DNA of 63,644 nucleotides, counting the filler, from Reticulomyxa filosa (lineage: Eukaryota > Protista > Foraminifera): the NCBI GenBank assembly GCA_000512085.1. It is 19 parts of 19 records of this genome, joined end to end, with 100 filler letters (N's around TTAATTAATTAA, not from the genome) between each part and the next. Parts side by side here need not be neighbours in the genome. Positions count along the whole stretch, not along the records: positions 50,646 to 60,607 come from ASPP01022494.1; 18 more parts are not named here. One strand, given 5' to 3'. Positions 32,283-60,607 of this stretch are shown here, one piece after another; position 1 is the stretch's first letter, and each line of letters starts with the position of its first letter. The notes under the pieces were generated by a model. It was not told where the DNA came from and made no database searches. It worked only from the letters and a program-made list of their open reading frames with translations. A program made the translations under genes and the position numbers.

Positions 32283-32493
32283 AGAACAAAACTTGTGTAT
32301 AAGTATTCAATGAAAGATAAAACATGGAATCAATGCAAAATCACATTACCAATGAAAATTAATTCATCATTTGCAATTTTGAGTGATGATGATGCAAATG
32401 TTCATGTCATTGGTGGATTTGATGCAAAATATGAAATACAGAAAAAGCGTGTGAGTGTGAATGTAGATGAACTATTTGAAAAATCAGAATTAT
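32283..32493 (+). pseudogene. Isolated Kelch-like repeat fragment
   Basis: VYKYSMKDKTW...TLP...AILSDD...VHVIGG is paralogous to VHKYSIRENKW...TLP...AILSEDNTYVHIIGG at about 52250-52370. No upstream ORF. Confidence 0.7.
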
Positions 32494-50645: not shown

Positions 50646-53201
50646 ATATGTTGAATGCGTTCACTGAACAATGAGAAATCAGCTGCTCGATATCCCCTTG
50701 TTGTTGACCACATCGTTAAGAAACCATAGTCATCATGTATATTGTTTCGTTTTGTTGTTTTTCCTCTTTTTCGAATGACGTCTGAAACTTGAGGATTACC
50801 ACTACCACGGCAAACATCAATGATAAATATTTTAGGATAATCTCTCAAAGATTCCATTTTGTTACAATTGAATAAGGAACGTATTCCATCTATTGGAACA
50901 TGTTTTCCATCACTTGTCACTAATGCATCGCCTTCATCCCCATGTCCCGCTATTATTATTATCAATGCATCATAATTCCTTTTATTTTTGTAAAGTTTAT
51001 GATTGACTATTACATTTTCTAAAAATTCGTCAATATCTTCTTTGTTCATTTTAAACTCTTCATTGCATACAAATTCATAATTCAATTCTTGTTTAAATAC
51101 TTCTCTGAAATTTTTTACGTCCTTTTCTCTCACATTTGGAAGATTACACAACATCTTGTTGTCACAATATTCGCTAATGGCAATCATTACCACTAAAGCG
51201 TTTTTTATTGTTTTTATTTTTCCAATTTTTTCAATTTTTGGAACCCAAAGTAGTTTAAATAAAGGATCACCATTTTTGAATTCTTTCCTCACATCTTCGT
51301 CTGATTCAATAGTATTATTCTTCATATCAACCAATTGCATTTTAAAAGGTTCGTTGTTAATTTTTAGTAAATATTTGGGCTCCAAGCAAGTACAAATTTG
51401 ACAAAAAAGCTCGTCAAATGTCAATTCTTTCATTTTTATCGACATTTTTCTTTCATCCACAATCACATATGCTGTCAACTATTTTATGTTTTGTGAATGT
51501 AATTTAATTAAAAATAAAAATGAAAGAGCACATAATTGATCAACTTCTTTTTCTTTGTTATCTTGATTATCCTATTATCAAATAACACAAATATCAATAT
51601 GTATTAACTATAGTTTCATACATTTTTATATCTTTCTGGGTTTTGTTTAATATTGGATATATAAAAAACACGGATAAAACAAAATATATACTAACATTTA
51701 CTTTCTTTCTTTTTCTCATGCCTATTTCTTTGTTTTTATTCTTAGTTTTCTTTCTTTTTTGTTCTACACTTTTCTCAGTTACCTATTTTTAAAAAAATTA
51801 GTGAATTTGCATAATTTTCTTTTTAAAATAAAACAAACAACAACAAACTTCATCAGTGGGATGATGATCAACGTAAGTTATCGCATGAATATTTCCATTG
51901 TTTAAATCATTTTTCCTTGGATTTTCAAAATCATCACTTGACAATTGCTCAAATTTTGAACACGGTTCTTCTTTTTCTTTTTTCTATTTTCATTTATACA
52001 GTTCAAATCGCCTTTCTTAAACGTTGTCACAACAGAAAAAGTAAAAACTCAACAGTAATCTGTTTGTTCATTTTATCTTGTTTATTATACTTTTTTTTTA
52101 CAATTTTATTATTTTTATCCTCTTCTTTTTTTTCTTCTTTTTCTTCTTCTATTTTCAATTTATTTTCTTTTTTCATTTCTTCTTCGCTCGGCCATTCATT
52201 CACTTTCGTTTTCATATGCATTGACACGCACTGATTTTTTTCATTCTTTCCTCCAATAATGTGCACATATGTATTGTCTTCACTTAATATTGCAATACAT
52301 TCCTTCAACAGACTAGGTAAAGTGTTTTGAAATGTCATCCATTTGTTTTCTCGAATCGAATACTTGTGCACTGATTTTGAAATAACATTATTACTGATAT
52401 TCAATCCGCCAAAGAACAAGATTGCGTCATTGACATACACATATGCATAAAAATTAAGTGACGCAATGTCATCACAGACAGGTAGTGGATGGAATTGAAA
52501 AGTTTTGTTTTCTTCGTTGTATTCAATTAACAATCCTGTATCATAACAAAATAATAGCATTTCATGAATTTTTTTCTTTATGCTACTTTCTTTTTCTTCA
52601 TTTGATTCTTGTCCATTTTCTGACTTTGATACAAAGCAATGACAACTAATATCATAGTTAGTTGGTAAAGCAGCACGTTCAATAAATTGAAATGTATTTA
52701 AATCGAACACACTAATTTTTTTGAAAAAGTGATAAATAACAAATGATTGTTGCTTCCACCAACCACTGCACGCACTCCAATAAAATCATCTTCAGATTTT
52801 CCAATGTAAACTCGGTTTTTATTGTTTGTGAAAGGAATCCATTTATTGTGATTTTTTGATTTATTTGATTTATTTGTTTCATTGTCATTATTGCCATCGC
52901 TCCAAACACTTACATATTTCATTATCAATGTATGTTTTTTAAATCCACCAAATGACAACAAATTAATTTCATTGCTGTCTTTGTTGTTGTTATCCAGTTT
53001 CACTACACAGTGTCCATCCAATTCAACGTCACTTGGATACGAACAGACAAACTTGTATTCATTTTTGAGTATATGATAAGAATAGCAGTCTCGGTTACGT
53101 GTGTCTCCAAAAATGAGGAGTTCATGTCTGTGTAGCACACATTGAGATAGAAAAAGTGGAGTGGGCAAATCCTTCAAAATTTGAAAAGTTTGATTACTCA
53201 T
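50646..53201 (-). CDS. Kelch-like propeller, linker, PB1-like module and caspase-like (C14) protease, 3'-partial
   Basis: Exons 53201-52102, 51983-51849, 51782-51702, 51571-51545 and 51478-50646, with all junctions GT-AG phase 0. Catalytic dyad AGHG and IIDVCRG. One frameshift in an A7 run near 52716-52722. Confidence 0.8.
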
Positions 53202-54497
53202 GCTGTTAATGCTGAGAATATTATGTAGTTTTTAAAAAGCAATTACAGAAAAAAGTCACCTTTTGAACAGACAAAAAACGCACAACTTTTGACTACTCGT
53301 AGAAGACAAAATCAAGTTTCTTCAAAAAAGTGTAATGTCAGTTCCTTCCAATAACCTCTTATAAGCAACAAACCAATTTATTCATTGAAAATAAATGCAT
53401 AAGATCATTTATTGTCTAAATATATAAATGAATTTTGAATTTTTTGTTACTTCCAAAGAGATTATATCTTTCATGACAAAAACGACAAAAGCACGCTTGA
53501 TTACTTCTTGATTTTGCTCATCTTTCGTCTTTTGAAAAAATATTTTACAATTTTCTAAAAAAGTGTATTTCATGTACGAAAATTATTTTATATCAAATAT
53601 TTTTTATTATTGGAGGACGTCGCAATACTTTGACAAAACAAAATACATGGTTTGCACAAATTATATTTTTTGATTTACTTTCACAAATGTAAAAAAATTT
53701 AATGAACTTGCTATTTTAAAAATTAATATATTTTGATTATGTAAAATTTGAACATTTGCTAATTCATTGGCCATTCCATCATTTCTCAACTTCCTTAACC
53801 GAACAAAAACTCTATTTTATAAAGGTCTTAGTGGTTCATGAATGAGCACATACATGGCACATTTTTTACAATTATTTTTCTATTGAAATAAAAAATTGTC
53901 ATTATTTAATTACCGAAAAGAGTTTTTCATTTCATTGCATCAAAATTTAGTAAATGCTTTATCAGAAAAATGACCAAAAAATTTGAATACTGAACTATCC
54001 TTTTCCAAAAGGAGAAATAACAAAATATAGTAATAGTTGTTGCATAATAAACAAACAGCAAATCCATTGAAGTGTATCCAAATTTCATCTTTAAATCCCT
54101 ACAAACTTTCGTGACGTTATTTAAATCACACTTGTACAAGTTTATATACAACATCAAGGCGGCTGAATAAAGGAAAGTAGCTTAAACAAGGAATTATATC
54201 ATTTCAAATGAAAAAATATTCAACAGAAATTTCCGTACCCAGCCAACAGCGTCAGCACAATTTCCAAAAAGGTGCGGTTCAGGGGAGCAAAAGCCTTGTG
54301 GCAGCAAAAAATTTTTAATTGTTTAATTAAAATTTCATATAAAAACAATAAAGTGTGAAGACTTACTATTTTTCGAGGTACTGATTTTTAGGTTGAAAGT
54401 TTATCAGCAAAAGAAGTAAAACACGTGTCAAAGTTTTTTGTACAACAACACAGAGCTGAATCACTATTATTAGTTATCACTGTGAAAATATTGAAAG

Positions 54498-55658
54498 ATG
54501 GACACCACTACCACTGAAAAAGAGGCTCCAATACTACGTTTGGTATGCTTCATCAACATTTAGTTTACCAACATAACGGGTTCCTACATATGATAGTTTA
54601 GTCAGAAAACAGAATAAAATTGATTATTCAAAGATGGATTCGAAGTTTACATATTAAATTTGAATGGGCCCACGTTTTAGATGAAATTATTGTCAAATAT
54701 GTTAATGCTATTTTTTCTTTAAAACAATAAAAATGAAAATATAAATTTATTTTCTTAATAATCAACGTTTTTGCACAGATCATATACAAATTGTCGAAAT
54801 TTTTGAAAGGGCATGACGATGGAATAAACAGTGTGAGATTTTCGGCAGATGGTGGCAAGATTGTTTCATCATCGCAAGATAAAACAATTCGTGTATGGGA
54901 TGTTGCATCCAGAAAACAAATCCAAATTTTTACTGGACACGACTATTGGGTCAATGCTGCAGAATTTTCACCAGATGGAAATACTGTTGCATCGTGTTCC
55001 TATGACAAAACAGTTCGATTGTGGAGTGTAGAATCAGGAAAAGAATTGATGAGATTAGAATGCGATTCAAATTGGATGTGGGGTCTAACCTTTTCTCCAG
55101 ATGGAAAATATATTGTTTATTTAGACAATACAACAATAAGATTCTTGGACCTTGGTTCTGGGAAAGAGATTCAAAGACTAGAAGGTCATTCAAATGGTGT
55201 ACTGTGTGCACGATTTTCACCAGATGGTCAAAAGCTTGTAACATCATCTTTTGATAGAACAATTATTATATGGGATGTAAAATTAGGTGAAATTTTGAGA
55301 CTGTTGAAAGGACATTCCGACAGTGTAATGAGTGTACAATTTTCTCCAAATGGCCAATTTATTGTGTCATGCTCAGCCGATACAACGATTCGCATATGGG
55401 AAGTGAAATCAGGAAAAGAATTGAAGAAATTGATGAATCATTTAGATAATGTAATAGATGTTAAATATCTTCAAGACGGTCAAATGATCGTATCATGTTC
55501 AGAAGATAAAACAATTTGTTTATGGAGTGTAAAATCAGGAAATAAAATACAAACATTGAACGGACATTCTCCGTTCAGTGAGGTGTATTGATGTTTCACC
55601 AACTGACGGTACAATTGTATCAGGTTCTTATGATAAAACAATCGGAATATGGGCATAA
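54498..55658 (+). CDS. WD40-repeat protein (7 blades; frameshift near 55572)
   Basis: GH...FSPDG...SxDxTIRxWD repeats and two short 5' exons. The last blade SVRCIDVSP...[11 protein letters not shown] is in the +1 frame. Confidence 0.9.
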
Positions 55659-56578
55659 TCCATCCGAAAAGCAAATAAAAATCTCTTTTTAAAACAATAG
55701 AGTTGAAAAGGATACTGCTTATAAATTGTCTGTTTCATAAGATTTTAATAATCTTTTTTTACTTTTGAATAGTTTCACATTAAAATTTGCCTTTGAAAGT
55801 ATCAATAAAACGAATATAAAAATTAAAAATTTTAATATTGTACAAATTAATAGACAGGAATAATTTGACTATGTTTTTAATTGATAGTATAACTTTGTGT
55901 CTGTATATTTGTTTAATAACAAATTGGGAATCGAGAATGGCTGTTATGCTTCATCACTTCGATTAATTCAAGTGGACTGGACAAGAAAAGTAGTTCATTG
56001 AACTCTTTTTCTGTAAATGAATTTCGGAGTCATATTTGATGATGTCTTCAGTAGTAAGAGTAGTTTGATTGTATCAAATGTGATTAAAAGATTGAAGAGA
56101 AAGAAACAATGAAAATATATTGGAGAACAAACACATTAACTTTTCAATTTCAACAGCATACAATGCTATTGTAGATTTGTGTGAATGTAAAAACAATATT
56201 CGGTAGACAGAACGCTCATGAGGACGCAGAAGAATTTGACAACACAAAACAAACCAAAAGTGCAACATACAATTCATAGTTTCACAGTGTGGAAAAACAT
56301 ACCATCACTTTGTGCAAATTATGATAACTTCATTTTGACAAAAAAAAAACAAAAAGCAGAGCACTTCCAAGAGAAAACCGTTTTTTGTGTATGTCGTAAT
56401 TGTTTATTAATTAAGGACTCAAAAAAAGCGTTTTTGTATTGATTAGCAATGTAAATTCGTAAAAAAGTGTTTTTGTGATCCAATTTGAAAATTGGTTATT
56501 GTAATAAATGTCTGTGTTACCAATTATTTGTCCCTTTTATTGTTTTTGTTTTTTTGATGCATTTGTTTTTATTGTACT

Positions 56579-57545
56579 TTACAAAATACTGCAACGACAT
56601 TTATCGCAGCAATTGGCCGACTGTGTAGAACGTGGGGAAGTGGCGTGAGTATCGACTTCTTGTGCGGACTCGCGTAGCAATGGACGACCATCGACTCCAG
56701 ACGGTTCCACTTTGTTGGGGTTAGAATGGCCATCCGAGACATTTTGCTGCGAATGGTTATAGCTTGTGTCATTCGAATTTTTAACGTGCACATTTTCTTG
56801 CACATCAGCTGGATTACTCATCCACGAGTCTCGCTTTTGTTGTGCTTCATTGGCTCCAAATTTTTGTGGATTGGCATTTGAGACTCCATAATTACTGTTG
56901 TTATCATACTGGGATAGGGATTGTTTGTCTTTGAGAGTATCCGCATCACTGCTTCCCATCCTTTTTTTGGATTCGCTCATTGTTGGTTTCATGTGAGGAG
57001 GGGCAATACTACCAAAACATTCGAAACATACACGTTTCTTTGATTTCTCCCCTTGAAATTTCACTAAATGTGGTGAGCATTTGCTACATACAACACGGCC
57101 ACATTTACGACAGTGGTGCTTTTTGTTGTCATTGTTGGTACAATATCATTACATTCGCATATGCATATATACATATACATACATATATGTATATAAGCAA
57201 AGAGAGTGATGCCAAATTTCTTCTTTGTTTTGATGCTCAAAAAGAAAAAAAATCGAAACTCGTCTTGCTTTTGCGATTCCAAACTTCATTGTGCAGATCA
57301 TACATTGTGGCGCTTCATCATCAGGAACCCAACCCTGTGGCCCAAACAAACATTATTATGTTTTGGGATCTCACGTGCAATTTTTCAATCGCGTTAGTTG
57401 TATATTTAAGGGAAAAAAAGATTATTCTTTAAAAAGGTTCTTGTAGAAATCAGCAAAAAGATCGTCATGGATTAGACCAAACTGATCCATTCCTTTTGAT
57501 ACGATTTTCGTCGATATCAATATCTGCATCGTCGTGGAGGGACAT
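56579..57545 (-). CDS. FYVE-domain protein with C-terminal CAAX box
   Basis: WVPDDEAPQCMIC...RR|HHCRKCGRVVCSKCS...RVCFEC (intron 57119-57259). Ends CCDKCRCSIL-stop. Confidence 0.9.
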
Positions 57546-58552
57546 TCAAATAATAAGATGATTGGTTTTTCGGAAAACAAAACTTTTTTATCCCCCGTTT
57601 TATTTGAGTTGGAAATATATTTTTTGATTTGTACAAGTTACTCCACAAAGTTTGCATACATAATAACACTTTTTTGTTAATAAATCTACAGAATCGTGTG
57701 TTATTTGTTTAGAATCAGTATTTATAAATCTTTTATTTTTTGATGTCATAAATTAAGATATTCACAACAATGCGCAATGCTTTTTTTACATTTAAATGCA
57801 TCTCTAACAAGCATCGAATTTTGGATATCAATGAAGCTTTATACATTTTGTTTTTACTGTGGTATACAACAAAATACTTCCAATATTTGCGTAATCTCTG
57901 TCTTCCAACAAGCAAAAGAAAGTGATAAAAAAATATGTACAAAAGCCGTTGTCAATTAGCTTTTCCCAGAAGTTGTTTCAGAAATAATTTTATCGGTATT
58001 GAAATACGACTTTTTGAAACTGTTAGAAGCAATTCTTTAATAATAATAAAGACAATAACTAATAAAGGGCAAAAAGATCTAAAGAAATATTAAAAAGAGC
58101 AAAAGATTGGTTGAAGAAGTGAATTAAGAAACTTTTTTTACCTTTTTCAATTAAGGTTTTTTCATTAAAGAAGTAGCGGGTGCATAAAAACTATTTTTCG
58201 GTGGAAATGTAATCCGCTTTTGCAGTAGTGTATGGTTGTTATAATGGTGATCAGATATCACCAACCATACCACAAGACGCATAAAAAGCGTACAAAAGGG
58301 GAAAAAGGATCAATTGGAGAACAACCGCCACAAAACGAAGGATTAACTTAATTAAGCGCAAAAATAAAAAATGAACAACAGAGCATAAGACAGTTTTGAA
58401 TTCTTTTCAACATCAGCCAAGTACGTTGGCATCAAGAGAAGAGCGGGGAAAGAAAGGGAAAAAAAAAAGAACAGAGACACACAACAAAAAAAAAAAAAAA
58501 TCCATCGAATAGTTTTCTCGTGTTGTTTATTAAAGCATTTTTTCTTTTGAAA

Positions 58553-60607
58553 TTATTGTTGTGAACTGAATTGATAATTAACGAAATAAGGATTGAAATT
58601 TTGTTGTTGTGGTTGTTGTGTTGGCATTTGTGAAGGTTGGGAATTGACAAAGGACAAGTTGGTTGCAGTGTTGGGGACAAGGGAAGAAGTAAAAGGCTTG
58701 AACGTAGGCTGTTGAGTTTGTGCGGTATTCTCTTTATGCAGTTGTTGTGCATTAAAGTGTTGAGAGCCGATATTAGAGAAATTGTTAATATTCAGATTGG
58801 TGTTTTGAGCGACATTTGCCTTGGAAACATGATCGGCAGTAACCATAGTGGGGACTCTCATATCGCTGACATTGACAGGATTTAAATACTCATTTGTATT
58901 TGCCGTTGGATTGGTGTTATTTAGGCCCGTGGCAACAAAGTTCATTCCCGAAAACGAGTTCAAATTAACGTCATTCAGGTTCATATTGACGGGAATGGAA
59001 GGAACACCGAGACCGAGCCCCAAACCGAGACCCATGGTTGTCGTGTTGGGTGGATTGATAGTTCCCAATGGCAAATTGAACGTGGGCATATTCAAATTGG
59101 CCACGTTGTTTAAATTCAATCCGGTGTTCAAAGTATTGAAATTGGAAAGAGAGGCAAAGTTGTTTAAATTGAAATTGCTGTTTAATTGATTCAATCCATT
59201 CCATTGGGCGTTGAATGTATTGAATGGATTTTGGAGAGTGTTCAGGTTGTTCATCTCATGAACCCCGGCATTGCCCATGCCACTGTTATTGCCAACAAAC
59301 TGTGACGCTACATTTGAAAAGGGCAGAAACGGATAAAACGGGGCCGATGATGAGCTTGGATTGAATGAGCCTTGGTTCAATTGATTCAATGTGTTGTTGG
59401 TATTGAATGTGGTCATAGCATTGGACGCATTTGGATTATTGTTGTTGGCTGTGTTATTTGCCGTGGCAATATTGTTGTTATTTAAATTATTCATGTTCAT
59501 GAGACTATTCATATTGTTGTTGACATTGTTATTGTTATTACTATTGTTATTGTTGTTATTATTGTTATTATTGTTATTATTGTTATTGAGACTGATATTA
59601 TTATTCACATTCGATACAATGTTTCCATTCAAACTGCCATGCGCTTGAACAAAAGTCGCCGGCGGTTTCGTTGTTTGTGGCGACGGTACTTTGTCATTGG
59701 GATAAAAATCGGGATTGAACTCGTTTGCATTCGGATTAAATTTGAACTGCTTCGGCTGATCGTTTTCGTTGGCCAAGTCATCCATTTTTTCAAATGTGTC
59801 TGTTTCTGTGCCTATTTCGCCCGTGTCATTGGTCTGTGTTTGCATATGCACACTCGCGACATTCTTTTGGCTATTGCTATTGCCGCCGATTTGGCTGTGA
59901 TTGCCCTGCATCTCGCTTGAGTGAATTGAGTGCGGTATTCCGAGGATATGTTTTCGCGTGATATCGGCGTCAATGAAACTGACATCAGCAAAGGCTGAGG
60001 GTTGAGGATTGGCCGAATTGCTTAGCAACGCCTTACTTTTGATTGGAGGTTTTGTGGGTGCTTTCGTGGGCTTCAATGTCGCCTAGTGCATATCAAGTCA
60101 TTTGCAACAAGGTCACACAAATTTCCAAAAATTTCAAACCAAAAAAAAAAAGACTAAACATTGGACTGAACAGCACTAAATAAGTCTTCTTCATCCATTT
60201 GAGCCGTGCTCACATCCAAATTGCGATCTTCCAAAACGTGGGGATTTGACGTTTGCTATTCACAAAATGGCACAATCGAGAACAAAGACTATTTGAGAGT
60301 GTGGACGATGCACGAACAAAGGAAAAAAAAAGTTCAAAACAGTGGCATTAATTTATCAGCAATGGCTTTTGCAGTTTTAAGCATTTTGGGAGTGACTTCG
60401 TCTTGATTGACAGGCTGCGTATATAGCCCTTCGTGATACGTGGTTTCCTTGCCTTTGAATTGGTCAAACTCTGATTGTTCCAATTCCTTTTTGATCGTGT
60501 CATCGTCTCCCCACGACAGTGCACTCTTCCCTTCTTTCGTCGCATTGCTATTCCCGCACTGCTGTTGCCGCCATTGGCGCTCGTGCTGCCATTGCCATTG
60601 CCATTGC
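58553..60607 (-). CDS. ATXN2: Ataxin-2/Pbp1-like protein (LsmAD, PAM2, Asn/Gln-rich region), 5'-partial
   Basis: LsmAD-like FDQF...TTYHEGLYT...AKAIA and TSNPHVLEDR...DEEDLFSAV. PAM2 FKFNPNANEFNP. Confidence 0.82.

What the first reader, a model, noticed from the sequence alone, without database searches (positions are those of the whole stretch)
50646..53201. Kelch propeller spliced to a caspase-family protease: candidate one-piece sensor-effector
Seen: the ORF track shows separate Kelch and protease ORFs. Three small open exons of 135, 81 and 27 nt (51983-51849, 51782-51702, 51571-51545) bridge them, with four GT-AG junctions that are all phase 0. The protease exon has no ATG at its start and begins at an AG acceptor. 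Known: caspase-fold proteases are activated by proximity through fused or adaptor sensor domains. Inference: the Kelch propeller (another paralog fragment lies at 32283) is a ligand sensor wired directly to a protease. This may be an innate-immune or cell-death receptor family in this lineage.
Basis: partly seen in the sequence, partly recalled or inferred. Interest (0 to 1): 0.82.

Follow-up and report, generated by a model that had tools for sequence, protein, structure and literature searches.

The report
Kelch-propeller caspase-like protease gene, foraminifer
This is one copy, possibly broken, of a large gene family in the foraminifer Reticulomyxa filosa that joins a Kelch propeller to a caspase-like protease; GenBank already models it as one gene, but the family's build has apparently not been described in print.

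Summary
All junctions are GT-AG and phase 0.

The DNA is Reticulomyxa filosa. This 9962-nt contig already carries GenBank model RFI_25954 (partial, 699 aa).

The architecture is well supported:
- At least 21 of 61 retrieved paralogous models are Kelch + caspase-like.
- One paralog encodes Kelch, linker and helical module in one uninterrupted ORF.
- Two "caspase-only" GenBank models start at an internal conserved Met, with a Kelch ORF directly upstream.

A high-confidence model of an intact paralog shows a six-bladed Kelch propeller, a long charged helix, a small helical module, a PB1/CIDE-N-like beta-grasp domain and a caspase fold with a His/Cys dyad.

This copy looks worn. It has a 1-nt frameshift at the A7 run, a helical module with two deletions, and a decayed second module.

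No RNA run could be listed, so splicing is inferred. A sensor or immune role is speculation.

The parts
52716..53201 (-). Kelch propeller, first part (start ATG at 53201; blades I-III), frame a
   Evidence: ORF. It is 48-56% identical to the N-terminal Kelch part of paralogs P0033, P0094 and P0038. The N-terminus MSNQTFQILKDLPTPL matches paralog starts.
52716..52722 (-). A7 homopolymer where the Kelch reading frame shifts (1-nt deletion relative to paralogs)
   Evidence: Frames switch here in tblastn. GenBank hides the shift in a 32-nt non-canonical 'intron' that removes the conserved LLFITFSKKIS.
52054..52715 (-). Kelch propeller, second part (blades III-VI), plus the K/E-rich helical linker, frame b. 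The exon ends at 52102 (reader, GenBank) or at 52054 (donor position shared with paralog L010).
   Evidence: Pfam Kelch-type hits are below threshold. tblastn to paralogs is.
51849..51983 (-). 135-nt exon: a shortened copy of the family's small helical module (KW.KWW...WLLN..KWK type). It lacks the N-terminal W-rich part and has 6- and 5-residue deletions.
   Evidence: tblastn to P0038 331-387, E 3.4e-8, alignment shown. Translation. The acceptor scores 9.5, third best of 54 AG sites in the region.
51609..51782 (-). Remnant of a second helical module. It may or may not be spliced in, and skipping it keeps the frame.
   Evidence: The DNA alignment with L006, L003 and L004 places it on their module exon. 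Only low-complexity protein matches were found.
51545..51571 (-). 27-nt micro-exon (DNQDNKEKE)
   Evidence: It is present at the start of GenBank model RFI_34929 (P0001) and in P0004, P0009 and P0033 as NQDxKEE-type linkers. The flanking intron ends are conserved. Its donor score of 9.0 is the best in the region.
51209..51478 (-). Beta-grasp (ubiquitin-like) domain most like PB1 and CIDE-N domains. It starts at the AG acceptor.
   Evidence: It is conserved in all paralogs. It was modelled from paralog P0189 (pLDDT above 90 over the domain). VIA-align Z is 7.9-7.3 to PB1 (Par6, Bem1p, p62, NBR1) and CIDE-N domains, tied with ubiquitin-likes. There is no Pfam hit.
50646..51208 (-). Caspase-like (Peptidase C14) domain, cut off by the contig edge before its C-terminal part. 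His codon at 50944-50942 (AGHG); Cys codon at 50812-50810 (DVCRG).
   Evidence: Pfam PF00656, E 1.7e-20. The best solved relatives are caspase-3/6/7 and caspase-8, with His and Cys aligned. The paralog model matches caspase-8/-3/CED-3 with TM 0.72-0.77 by target.

Best explanation
The locus is one member of a large Reticulomyxa filosa gene family. In this family a single spliced gene encodes, from N to C: a six-bladed Kelch propeller, a long charged helix, one or two small helical modules, a short linker encoded by a micro-exon, a PB1/CIDE-N-like beta-grasp domain, and a caspase-fold cysteine protease with a His/Cys dyad.

Shown: the architecture, the homology of the parts, and the exon layout by comparison with paralogs and with GenBank's model of this same contig (RFI_25954).

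Inferred: by analogy with other C14 proteases, the protease is made as an inactive precursor and is switched on by being brought together with other copies. The beta-grasp domain is the likely self-association part, and the Kelch propeller is the part that binds a partner or recruits the protein. The P1 preference is probably not aspartate, because the Asp-binding Gln and Arg of caspases are replaced by Asp and Pro.

This copy is worn. It has a 1-nt frameshift in the propeller, a shortened module and a decayed second module. It is either a young pseudogene or, for the frameshift alone, an assembly error.
For: - Organism and family: all hits are R. filosa proteins.
- GenBank model of this contig: P0203 (RFI_25954, 699 aa, contig 9962 nt, the same length as the piece) maps exon by exon onto the window and carries Kelch and PF00656 domains.
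- Paralogs: 21 of 61 retrieved caspase-like models carry the Kelch cassette.
- Evidence that does not depend on splicing: L008 has Kelch, K/E linker and module in one ORF.
- A clean three-exon paralog gene, L010.
- The L003 and L004 'caspase-only' models start at the internal Met of the conserved KW-M-KWW motif. Their frame is open back to the AG, and a Kelch ORF lies 90-150 nt upstream on the same strand.
- Kelch tree: 17 of 18 caspase-linked Kelch domains fall in one half of the tree, and the window's Kelch lies in a supported clade (95) with 15 of them.
- Structure of intact paralog P0189: mean pLDDT 89.8, with domain order as stated. Foldseek hits are Kelch domains (E down to 2.5e-14) and caspase-8/-3/CED-3. 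The beta-grasp domain matches PB1 and CIDE-N domains.
- The catalytic motifs GHG and D[AVI]CRG are conserved across most paralogs and are present in the window.
- Signs of wear in this copy.
Against: - No RNA evidence: no sequencing run could be listed, so every junction is inferred.
- The paralog models are themselves predictions. They often patch frame breaks with 22-40-nt non-canonical gaps.
- Every Kelch exon runs into a stop within about 10-25 codons of the proposed donor, so a Kelch-only product is possible if the intron is retained.
- A protease-only product could start at the ATG at 51445.
- A crude splice-site score cannot choose between the Kelch donors at 52102 and 52054. Both are weak (3.6 and 3.7).
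- The activation mechanism and substrate preference rest on analogy and on a sequence alignment, not on any assay.
- The structure was predicted for a paralog, not for the window's own protein.
Confidence: 0.8

Rival explanations
1. Two separate neighbouring genes. A Kelch gene ends at its own stop (52027), and a protease gene starts at the ATG at 51445 or at the conserved Met of IKMKEL. The pair is duplicated together, and the fused GenBank models are gene-prediction artefacts in A/T-rich, K/E-rich spacer DNA.
For: - GenBank itself splits the pair at L003 and L004.
- The Kelch ORF has an in-frame stop soon after each candidate donor.
- Some caspase-like paralogs have no Kelch upstream (L002, L005).
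- The 81-nt exon has no homology support.
- There are no RNA data.
Against: - L008 encodes Kelch, linker and module in one ORF.
- The module, micro-exon and LTAYVI.DE.KK segments are conserved as protein upstream of every candidate Met.
- The window's module exon has no Met at all.
- Phases match at all junctions in several loci.
- The Kelch subfamily co-segregates with the caspase partner.
Confidence: 0.1
2. The architecture is real for the family, but this copy is a dead pseudogene and makes no working protein.
For: - There is a 1-nt deletion at the A7 run inside a conserved blade.
- The helical module has lost its W-rich start and 11 core residues.
- The second module has decayed to a K-rich stub that runs into a stop.
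- Many paralogs also carry frame breaks.
Against: - The propeller halves (167 and 227 codons) and the protease ORF (277+ codons) are otherwise open in DNA of about 30% G+C.
- The His and Cys are intact.
- The frameshift sits in a homopolymer and could be an assembly error.
- The module deletions are in frame.
Confidence: 0.45
3. One reading: an intact one-piece receptor in which the Kelch propeller senses a ligand and directly triggers the protease, as part of an innate-immune or cell-death receptor family.
For: - The family is large and modular. The Kelch cassette is joined to WD40, TPR or caspase-like parts, and the caspase cassette to Kelch, TPR or a Ras-like GTPase.
- The BC and DA propeller loops vary most among paralogs: 1.70 bits, against 1.27 for the other loops and 0.86 for strands.
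- A PB1/CIDE-N-like domain lies next to the protease.
Against: - Nothing here tests function.
- Loop entropy is descriptive, not a selection test.
- No NTPase switch domain of the NLR/STAND type is present.
- This copy is damaged.
Confidence: 0.2

Closest known systems
GenBank RFI_25954 (hypothetical protein, partial, Reticulomyxa filosa; P0203) and its annotated paralogs such as RFI_21820 (P0038) and P0189 (named 'caspase-8')
   Same: It is the same locus and nearly the same exon model: exons 52710-52102, 51983-51849, 51571-51545 and 51478 onward. It has the same Kelch + Peptidase_C14 content.
   Different: GenBank removes the frameshift with a 32-nt non-canonical gap that deletes conserved residues. 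It also uses a longer middle exon (51782-51609). No function or family description is attached.
Reticulomyxa caspase-like proteins reported by Klim et al. 2018 (PMC5982838)
   Same: It is the same protease family. In their trees it groups with animal caspases. Here the best sequence and fold matches are also animal caspases.
   Different: That paper treats only the protease domain and does not mention Kelch. The Kelch, TPR and Ras partners, the beta-grasp domain and the changed S1 residues are described here.
Initiator caspases with CARD or DED prodomains, and the paracaspase MALT1 (established knowledge)
   Same: It shares the logic of an N-terminal interaction region placed before a C14 protease that is activated by induced proximity. 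It has the caspase fold and the His/Cys dyad.
   Different: The prodomain is a Kelch propeller, a helical module and a beta-grasp domain, not a death-fold domain. The Gln of QACRG is Asp, and the Arg179-equivalent is Pro. From general knowledge, this resembles Arg/Lys-specific relatives more than Asp-specific caspases.
Bacterial metacaspase/orthocaspase proteins joined to WD40, TPR or Sel1 repeats (Asplund-Samuelsson et al. 2012, PMC3501461)
   Same: A C14 protease is joined to protein-interaction repeats, in lineage-specific expansions.
   Different: In those proteins the repeats usually follow the protease, often with a NACHT NTPase. That paper does not report Kelch as a partner (0 occurrences). 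Here the partner is N-terminal and no NTPase is present.
Kelch substrate receptors (KLHDC10, KLHDC2/3, LZTR1, NS1-BP, KLHL3/12)
   Same: It is a six-bladed Kelch propeller fold. The best Foldseek matches have E 2.5e-14 to 5e-11.
   Different: There is no BTB/BACK or Elongin-binding part. The propeller is joined to a protease, WD40 or TPR part instead. Sequence identity is only 11-16%.

Membership tests
Peptidase C14 (caspase/metacaspase superfamily, clan CD) | Match to Pfam PF00656 above its curated cut-off | tested here: met
   74.2 bits against a cut-off of 21.4, E 1.7e-20, for window 50648-51478.
Peptidase C14 (caspase/metacaspase superfamily, clan CD) | Catalytic His and Cys at the conserved positions | tested here: met
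   aGHGdeg aligns with SHGEEG, and idvCRG aligns with IQACRG, of caspase-3/6/7. The codons are 50944-50942 and 50812-50810. The motifs are conserved in most paralogs.
Peptidase C14 (caspase/metacaspase superfamily, clan CD) | Caspase/haemoglobinase fold | tested here: met
   This was tested on paralog P0189, not on the truncated window protein. The AF2 model has pLDDT 89.8. Foldseek to caspase-8, caspase-3, caspase-6 and CED-3 gives TM 0.67-0.77 by target.
Caspases proper (C14A, Asp-specific) | QACxG pentapeptide with Gln, and the Arg179-equivalent that binds the P1 Asp | tested here: not met
   The pentapeptide is DVCRG (D[AVI]CRG in the family). The column aligned with the caspase Arg holds Pro in the window, and K, E or P in paralogs.
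Caspases proper (C14A, Asp-specific) | Second S1 arginine (Arg341-equivalent) in the small-subunit region | tested here: inconclusive
   This region lies beyond the contig edge in the window. In paralogs the HMMER alignment stops at STTKGH/STAPGY. Extending it without gaps puts a conserved Asp there, but that step relies on the caspase-3 sequence from memory.
Kelch beta-propeller | Match to Kelch-type Pfam models above cut-off | tested here: not met
   For the window ORF the matches are below cut-off: PF24981 at 28.5 against 50, and Kelch_6 at 20 against 25.3. Precomputed Pfam lists do give Kelch-type families for the GenBank model P0203.
Kelch beta-propeller | Six four-stranded blades with the Kelch topology | tested here: met
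   This was tested on paralog P0189, whose Kelch part is 50-60% identical to the window's. There are 24 strands in six blades. Foldseek E is 2.5e-14 to KLHDC10 and 2e-12 to NS1-BP Kelch.
PB1 / CIDE-N oligomerisation domains | Beta-grasp fold with specific similarity to PB1 or CIDE-N beyond the general ubiquitin-like fold | tested here: inconclusive
   PB1 and CIDE-N chains lead the list at Z 7.9-7.2, but they are tied with ubiquitin-like and RBD domains. Foldseek E is no better than 0.02. There is no Pfam hit.
NLR / STAND immune receptors | Central P-loop NTPase (NACHT or NB-ARC) | tested here: not met
   There is no such Pfam hit in the window proteins or in the 46 long Kelch-family members. 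The P0189 model has no such domain.

The most novel reading that the evidence does not exclude
R. filosa, a giant syncytial cell that fuses with others, may run a receptor repertoire without an NTPase switch. In this reading, variable Kelch, TPR or WD40 surfaces recognise non-self or pathogen cues. A PB1/CIDE-N-like domain then polymerises and switches on a caspase-fold protease that cuts after basic residues. This would be a death or incompatibility switch that evolved independently of animal apoptosomes and of fungal or plant NLRs.
Probability: 0.12. Interest if true: 0.75.

Novelty: new variant of a known kind. Interest (0 to 1): 0.42.

Why it matters
Caspase-fold proteases outside animals are rare. 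The Reticulomyxa ones have been used as an outgroup and as evidence in arguments about how apoptosis arose (PMC5982838, PMC10959488).

If these proteases belong to a family of dozens of multi-domain genes, they are less likely to be simple homologues of animal executioner caspases. The family has Kelch, TPR or Ras-like front ends, a PB1/CIDE-N-like domain and altered substrate-pocket residues. It may be a lineage-specific regulated-proteolysis system, and that changes how the sequences should be used in evolutionary arguments.

For this locus the practical result is modest. The gene is already in GenBank, its model hides a frameshift, and the copy may be dead.

Tried and rejected
- RNA evidence: the look-up of sequencing runs listed no run, so read laying could not be used. 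Neither the junctions nor the A7/A8 question could be tested on reads.
- Genome paper: the paper by Glöckner et al. is not held.
- Helical module: it has no Pfam match and no usable Atlas match. It was not folded alone, so its fold remains unnamed.
- Splice-site matrix: I built one from 16 GT-AG introns of GenBank models. It supports the micro-exon donor and the protease and module acceptors. It cannot choose between the two Kelch donors or the two donors of the middle exon. It is also partly circular, because its training introns are predictions.
- Frame breaks and homopolymers: I asked whether frame breaks in paralog models sit in homopolymers, which would point to sequencing error. The result was mixed and gives no verdict.
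- dN/dS on propeller loops: I did not attempt it. Paralogs are only 50-60% identical in protein, and DNA was in hand for few loci. I used a loop-entropy comparison instead.
Exons were searched by reference, and the only joined sequence used is GenBank's model P0203 as returned by the database.
- NLR-type reading: rejected, because no NTPase domain is present.
- 'True caspase': rejected, because the Asp-binding residues are not conserved.
Full report
**What the DNA is**

The piece (50646-60607, 9962 nt, about 30% G+C) comes from the naked foraminifer Reticulomyxa filosa. Every protein hit to its ORFs is an RFI_ protein of the GenBank assembly GCA_000512085.1. One hit, P0203, is 'hypothetical protein RFI_25954, partial' (699 aa). 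It sits on a contig of exactly 9962 nt and maps letter for letter onto the window's minus strand. It is therefore GenBank's own model of this locus. It already carries Kelch-type Pfam families and PF00656.

**Checking the observation**

  - Two are Kelch-like ORFs, at 53201-52698 and 52710-52027.
  - The third is a Peptidase_C14 ORF that runs from 51478 off the piece edge at 50646 (Pfam E 1.7e-20).
- Reading the sequence confirms the three small exons, their AG and GT flanks and phase 0.
- GenBank's exons are:
  - 53201-52743
  - 52710-52102
  - 51983-51849
  - 51782-51609
  - 51571-51545
  - 51478 onward.
- The two Kelch frames switch exactly at the A7 run, 52716-52722.
  - Paralogs read ...AAA AAT ATT AGT GTG TTT... 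where the window has AAA AAA -TT AGT GTG TTC. One base is missing from a conserved blade.
  - GenBank hides this in a 32-nt non-canonical gap that deletes the conserved LLFITFSKKIS.

**Support for each exon**

- The 27-nt micro-exon (DNQDNKEKE) opens GenBank model RFI_34929. It recurs as NQ(D/N)xKE-type linkers in other paralogs, and its intron ends are conserved.
- The 135-nt exon is homologous to a conserved module of about 65 residues (tblastn to P0038 331-387, E 3.4e-8). It lacks the module's W-rich start and has 6- and 5-residue gaps.
- The 81-nt exon has only low-complexity matches.
  - A DNA alignment places it on the K-rich start of a second module that is intact in L006, L003 and L004 but decayed here.
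  - Skipping it keeps the frame.
- The Kelch donor is uncertain.
  - ACT|GTTGAG at 52054 is also phase 0.
  - It lies where the clean paralog gene L010 has GAA|GTTAAG, and L003 and L004 have GTTGGG and GTTAAG.
Introns in GenBank's models here are mostly 55-78 nt.
  - A crude splice-site score does not separate the two donors (3.7 against 3.6).

**One gene or two**

No RNA run could be listed, so the evidence is comparative.

1. Of 61 caspase-like R. filosa models retrieved, 21 also carry the Kelch cassette.
2. In L008, the Kelch propeller, the K/E-rich linker and the module lie in one uninterrupted ORF. This does not depend on any splice prediction.
3. L010 is a clean three-exon gene: Kelch + linker, then module + linker, then beta-grasp + protease. 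Its introns are GT-AG and 77 and 67 nt long.
4. Two models that GenBank calls as protease only (L003, L004) have a Kelch gene 90-150 nt upstream on the same strand.
   - Their annotated start Met is the internal Met of the conserved KW-M-KWW motif.
   - The frame is open, and still homologous, back to the AG.
   - These look like one gene split in two by the annotation.
5. The window's protease exon has conserved residues (LTAYVIVDERK) before its first Met. Its module exon has no Met at all.
6. In a tree of 106 Kelch domains, 17 of 18 caspase-linked ones fall in one half. The window's Kelch lies in a clade with support 95 that holds 15 of them. FastTree support is weak elsewhere in the tree.

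Against one gene:
- The paralog models are predictions.
- Each Kelch exon meets a stop soon after the donor.
- Some protease genes have no Kelch upstream.

**What the protein looks like**

I folded the intact paralog P0189 (758 aa) with a 73-row family alignment. Mean pLDDT was 89.8. The domains in order are:
- six four-stranded blades (residues 1-321)
- one long helix (328-369)
- a small helical bundle (373-428)
- a beta-grasp unit (435-514)
- an alpha/beta protease domain (519-752).

Foldseek matches the propeller to Kelch domains: KLHDC10 at E 2.5e-14, then NS1-BP and LZTR1. It matches the protease to caspase-8, caspase-3, caspase-6 and CED-3, with TM 0.67-0.77 by target.

Folded apart, the beta-grasp unit is most like PB1 domains (Par6, Bem1p, p62, NBR1, MEKK3) and CIDE-N domains, at Z 7.9-7.2. 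This is a tie with ubiquitin-like domains, so only the fold class is settled. The helical module has no Pfam or Atlas match.

**The protease**

- His (AGHG, codon 50944-50942) and Cys (DVCRG, codon 50812-50810) align with the caspase dyad. They are conserved in most paralogs.
- The Gln of the caspase QACRG motif is Asp here. The column of the first Asp-binding arginine holds Pro.
- From general knowledge, an acidic residue two positions before the catalytic Cys is the pattern of metacaspases and paracaspases, which cut after Arg or Lys. I therefore call this domain caspase-like, and I infer, without a test, that its P1 preference is not Asp.

**The wider family**

- An exhaustive search with the Kelch part found 378 clusters, 213 of them at E 1e-10 or better. 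The ten I sampled were R. filosa proteins, apart from two unnamed metagenome proteins, one from the Kelch search and one from the protease search.
- Of 46 long members, 23 join the Kelch cassette to WD40 repeats, 4 to TPR repeats and 5 to the protease.
- The module + beta-grasp + protease cassette is also found behind TPR arrays (5 models) and behind a Ras-like GTPase (1 model).
- So two cassettes have been shuffled in a large family that is partly broken.
- Among the 18 caspase-linked propellers, the BC and DA loops vary most: 1.70 bits, against 1.27 for the AB and CD loops and 0.86 for strands.
  - In Kelch proteins the BC and DA loops form the usual binding face.
  - The loop labels come from the secondary structure of the model, and the face assignment comes from convention.
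  - This is a description, not a selection test.

**How it most likely works**

- Shown: the domain order and the intact dyad.
- Inferred: like other C14 proteases, the enzyme is probably held inactive until copies are brought together. The beta-grasp domain next to it is the likeliest self-association part. The propeller binds a partner or a cue.
- Whether that serves defence, fusion incompatibility or ordinary regulation cannot be told from sequence.
- No NTPase switch is present, so this is not an NLR-type protein.

**State of this copy**

- It has a frameshift in a homopolymer, a shortened module and a decayed second module.
- The propeller halves and the protease ORF are otherwise open.
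- The gene is cut by the contig end.
- Contig L001 is 100% identical to window 51661-50956 and then diverges by about 15%, with indels. A near-identical second copy, or an assembly break in a repeat, therefore lies here.
- I put roughly even odds on this copy being a pseudogene.

**Comparison with what is known**

- Caspase-like proteins of Reticulomyxa were reported by Klim et al. 2018, with no mention of Kelch. They have been used as an outgroup since.
- No held paper pairs 'Reticulomyxa' or 'Peptidase_C14' with 'Kelch'.
- C14 proteases joined to WD40, TPR or Sel1 repeats are known in bacteria (PMC3501461).
- The locus is therefore already annotated, and the kind is known. What is new is the description of the Kelch + helical module + beta-grasp variant and the changed pocket residues.

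I did not build a joined protein from the window's exons. Exons were searched by reference, and the only joined sequence used was GenBank's model as returned by the database.

Noticed in passing
window 54605-55670 (+): This is a WD40 ORF. It has no ATG start (the ORF opens with TTG at 54791). It is 43-49% identical to the linker and WD40 half of Kelch-WD40 paralogs (P0044, P0041, P0060, P0074). It has no Kelch part on its own strand, and it points away from the Kelch-protease gene. It looks like a cassette fragment or the tail of a rearranged gene.
   Followed up: partly
window 50956-51661 and L001:1-706 (ASPP01035632.1): A second GenBank contig starts inside this gene. It is 100% identical for 706 nt and then diverges abruptly (about 15% mismatches plus indels) up to the window's contig end. 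This could be a very recent duplicate, gene conversion, or an assembly break at a repeat. Its model RFI_34929 keeps the His and Cys but has small deletions beside both.
   Followed up: partly
L003:3162-5970 and L004:4951-7681: GenBank models RFI_11496 and RFI_10549 (protease only) begin at an internal conserved Met. A Kelch gene lies 90-150 nt upstream on the same strand, and the frame is open back to an AG. They are probably single Kelch-protease genes split by the annotation.
   Followed up: yes
window 52711-52742; L011, L009, L008, L004 (gaps of 22-40 nt): GenBank models in this family bridge frame breaks with very short gaps that lack GT-AG ends. Some sit in homopolymers and some do not. 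Protein sequences of this family in public databases therefore contain small artificial deletions.
   Followed up: partly
window 57149-57349 (-): This short ORF has the start of a FYVE zinc-finger motif (WVPDDEAPQCMICTMKF; Pfam FYVE, E 0.0016, first 24 profile positions only). It is probably one exon of a spliced FYVE gene that continues towards 56579-57064.
   Followed up: partly
window 58553-60076 (-): This is a 507-codon ORF rich in Asn, with runs of N and GL repeats. It has no Pfam match.
   Followed up: no
P0185, P0193, P0195, P0196, P0202, P0186 (R. filosa): The same module + beta-grasp + protease cassette also occurs behind long TPR arrays, and once behind a Ras-like GTPase domain.
   Followed up: partly
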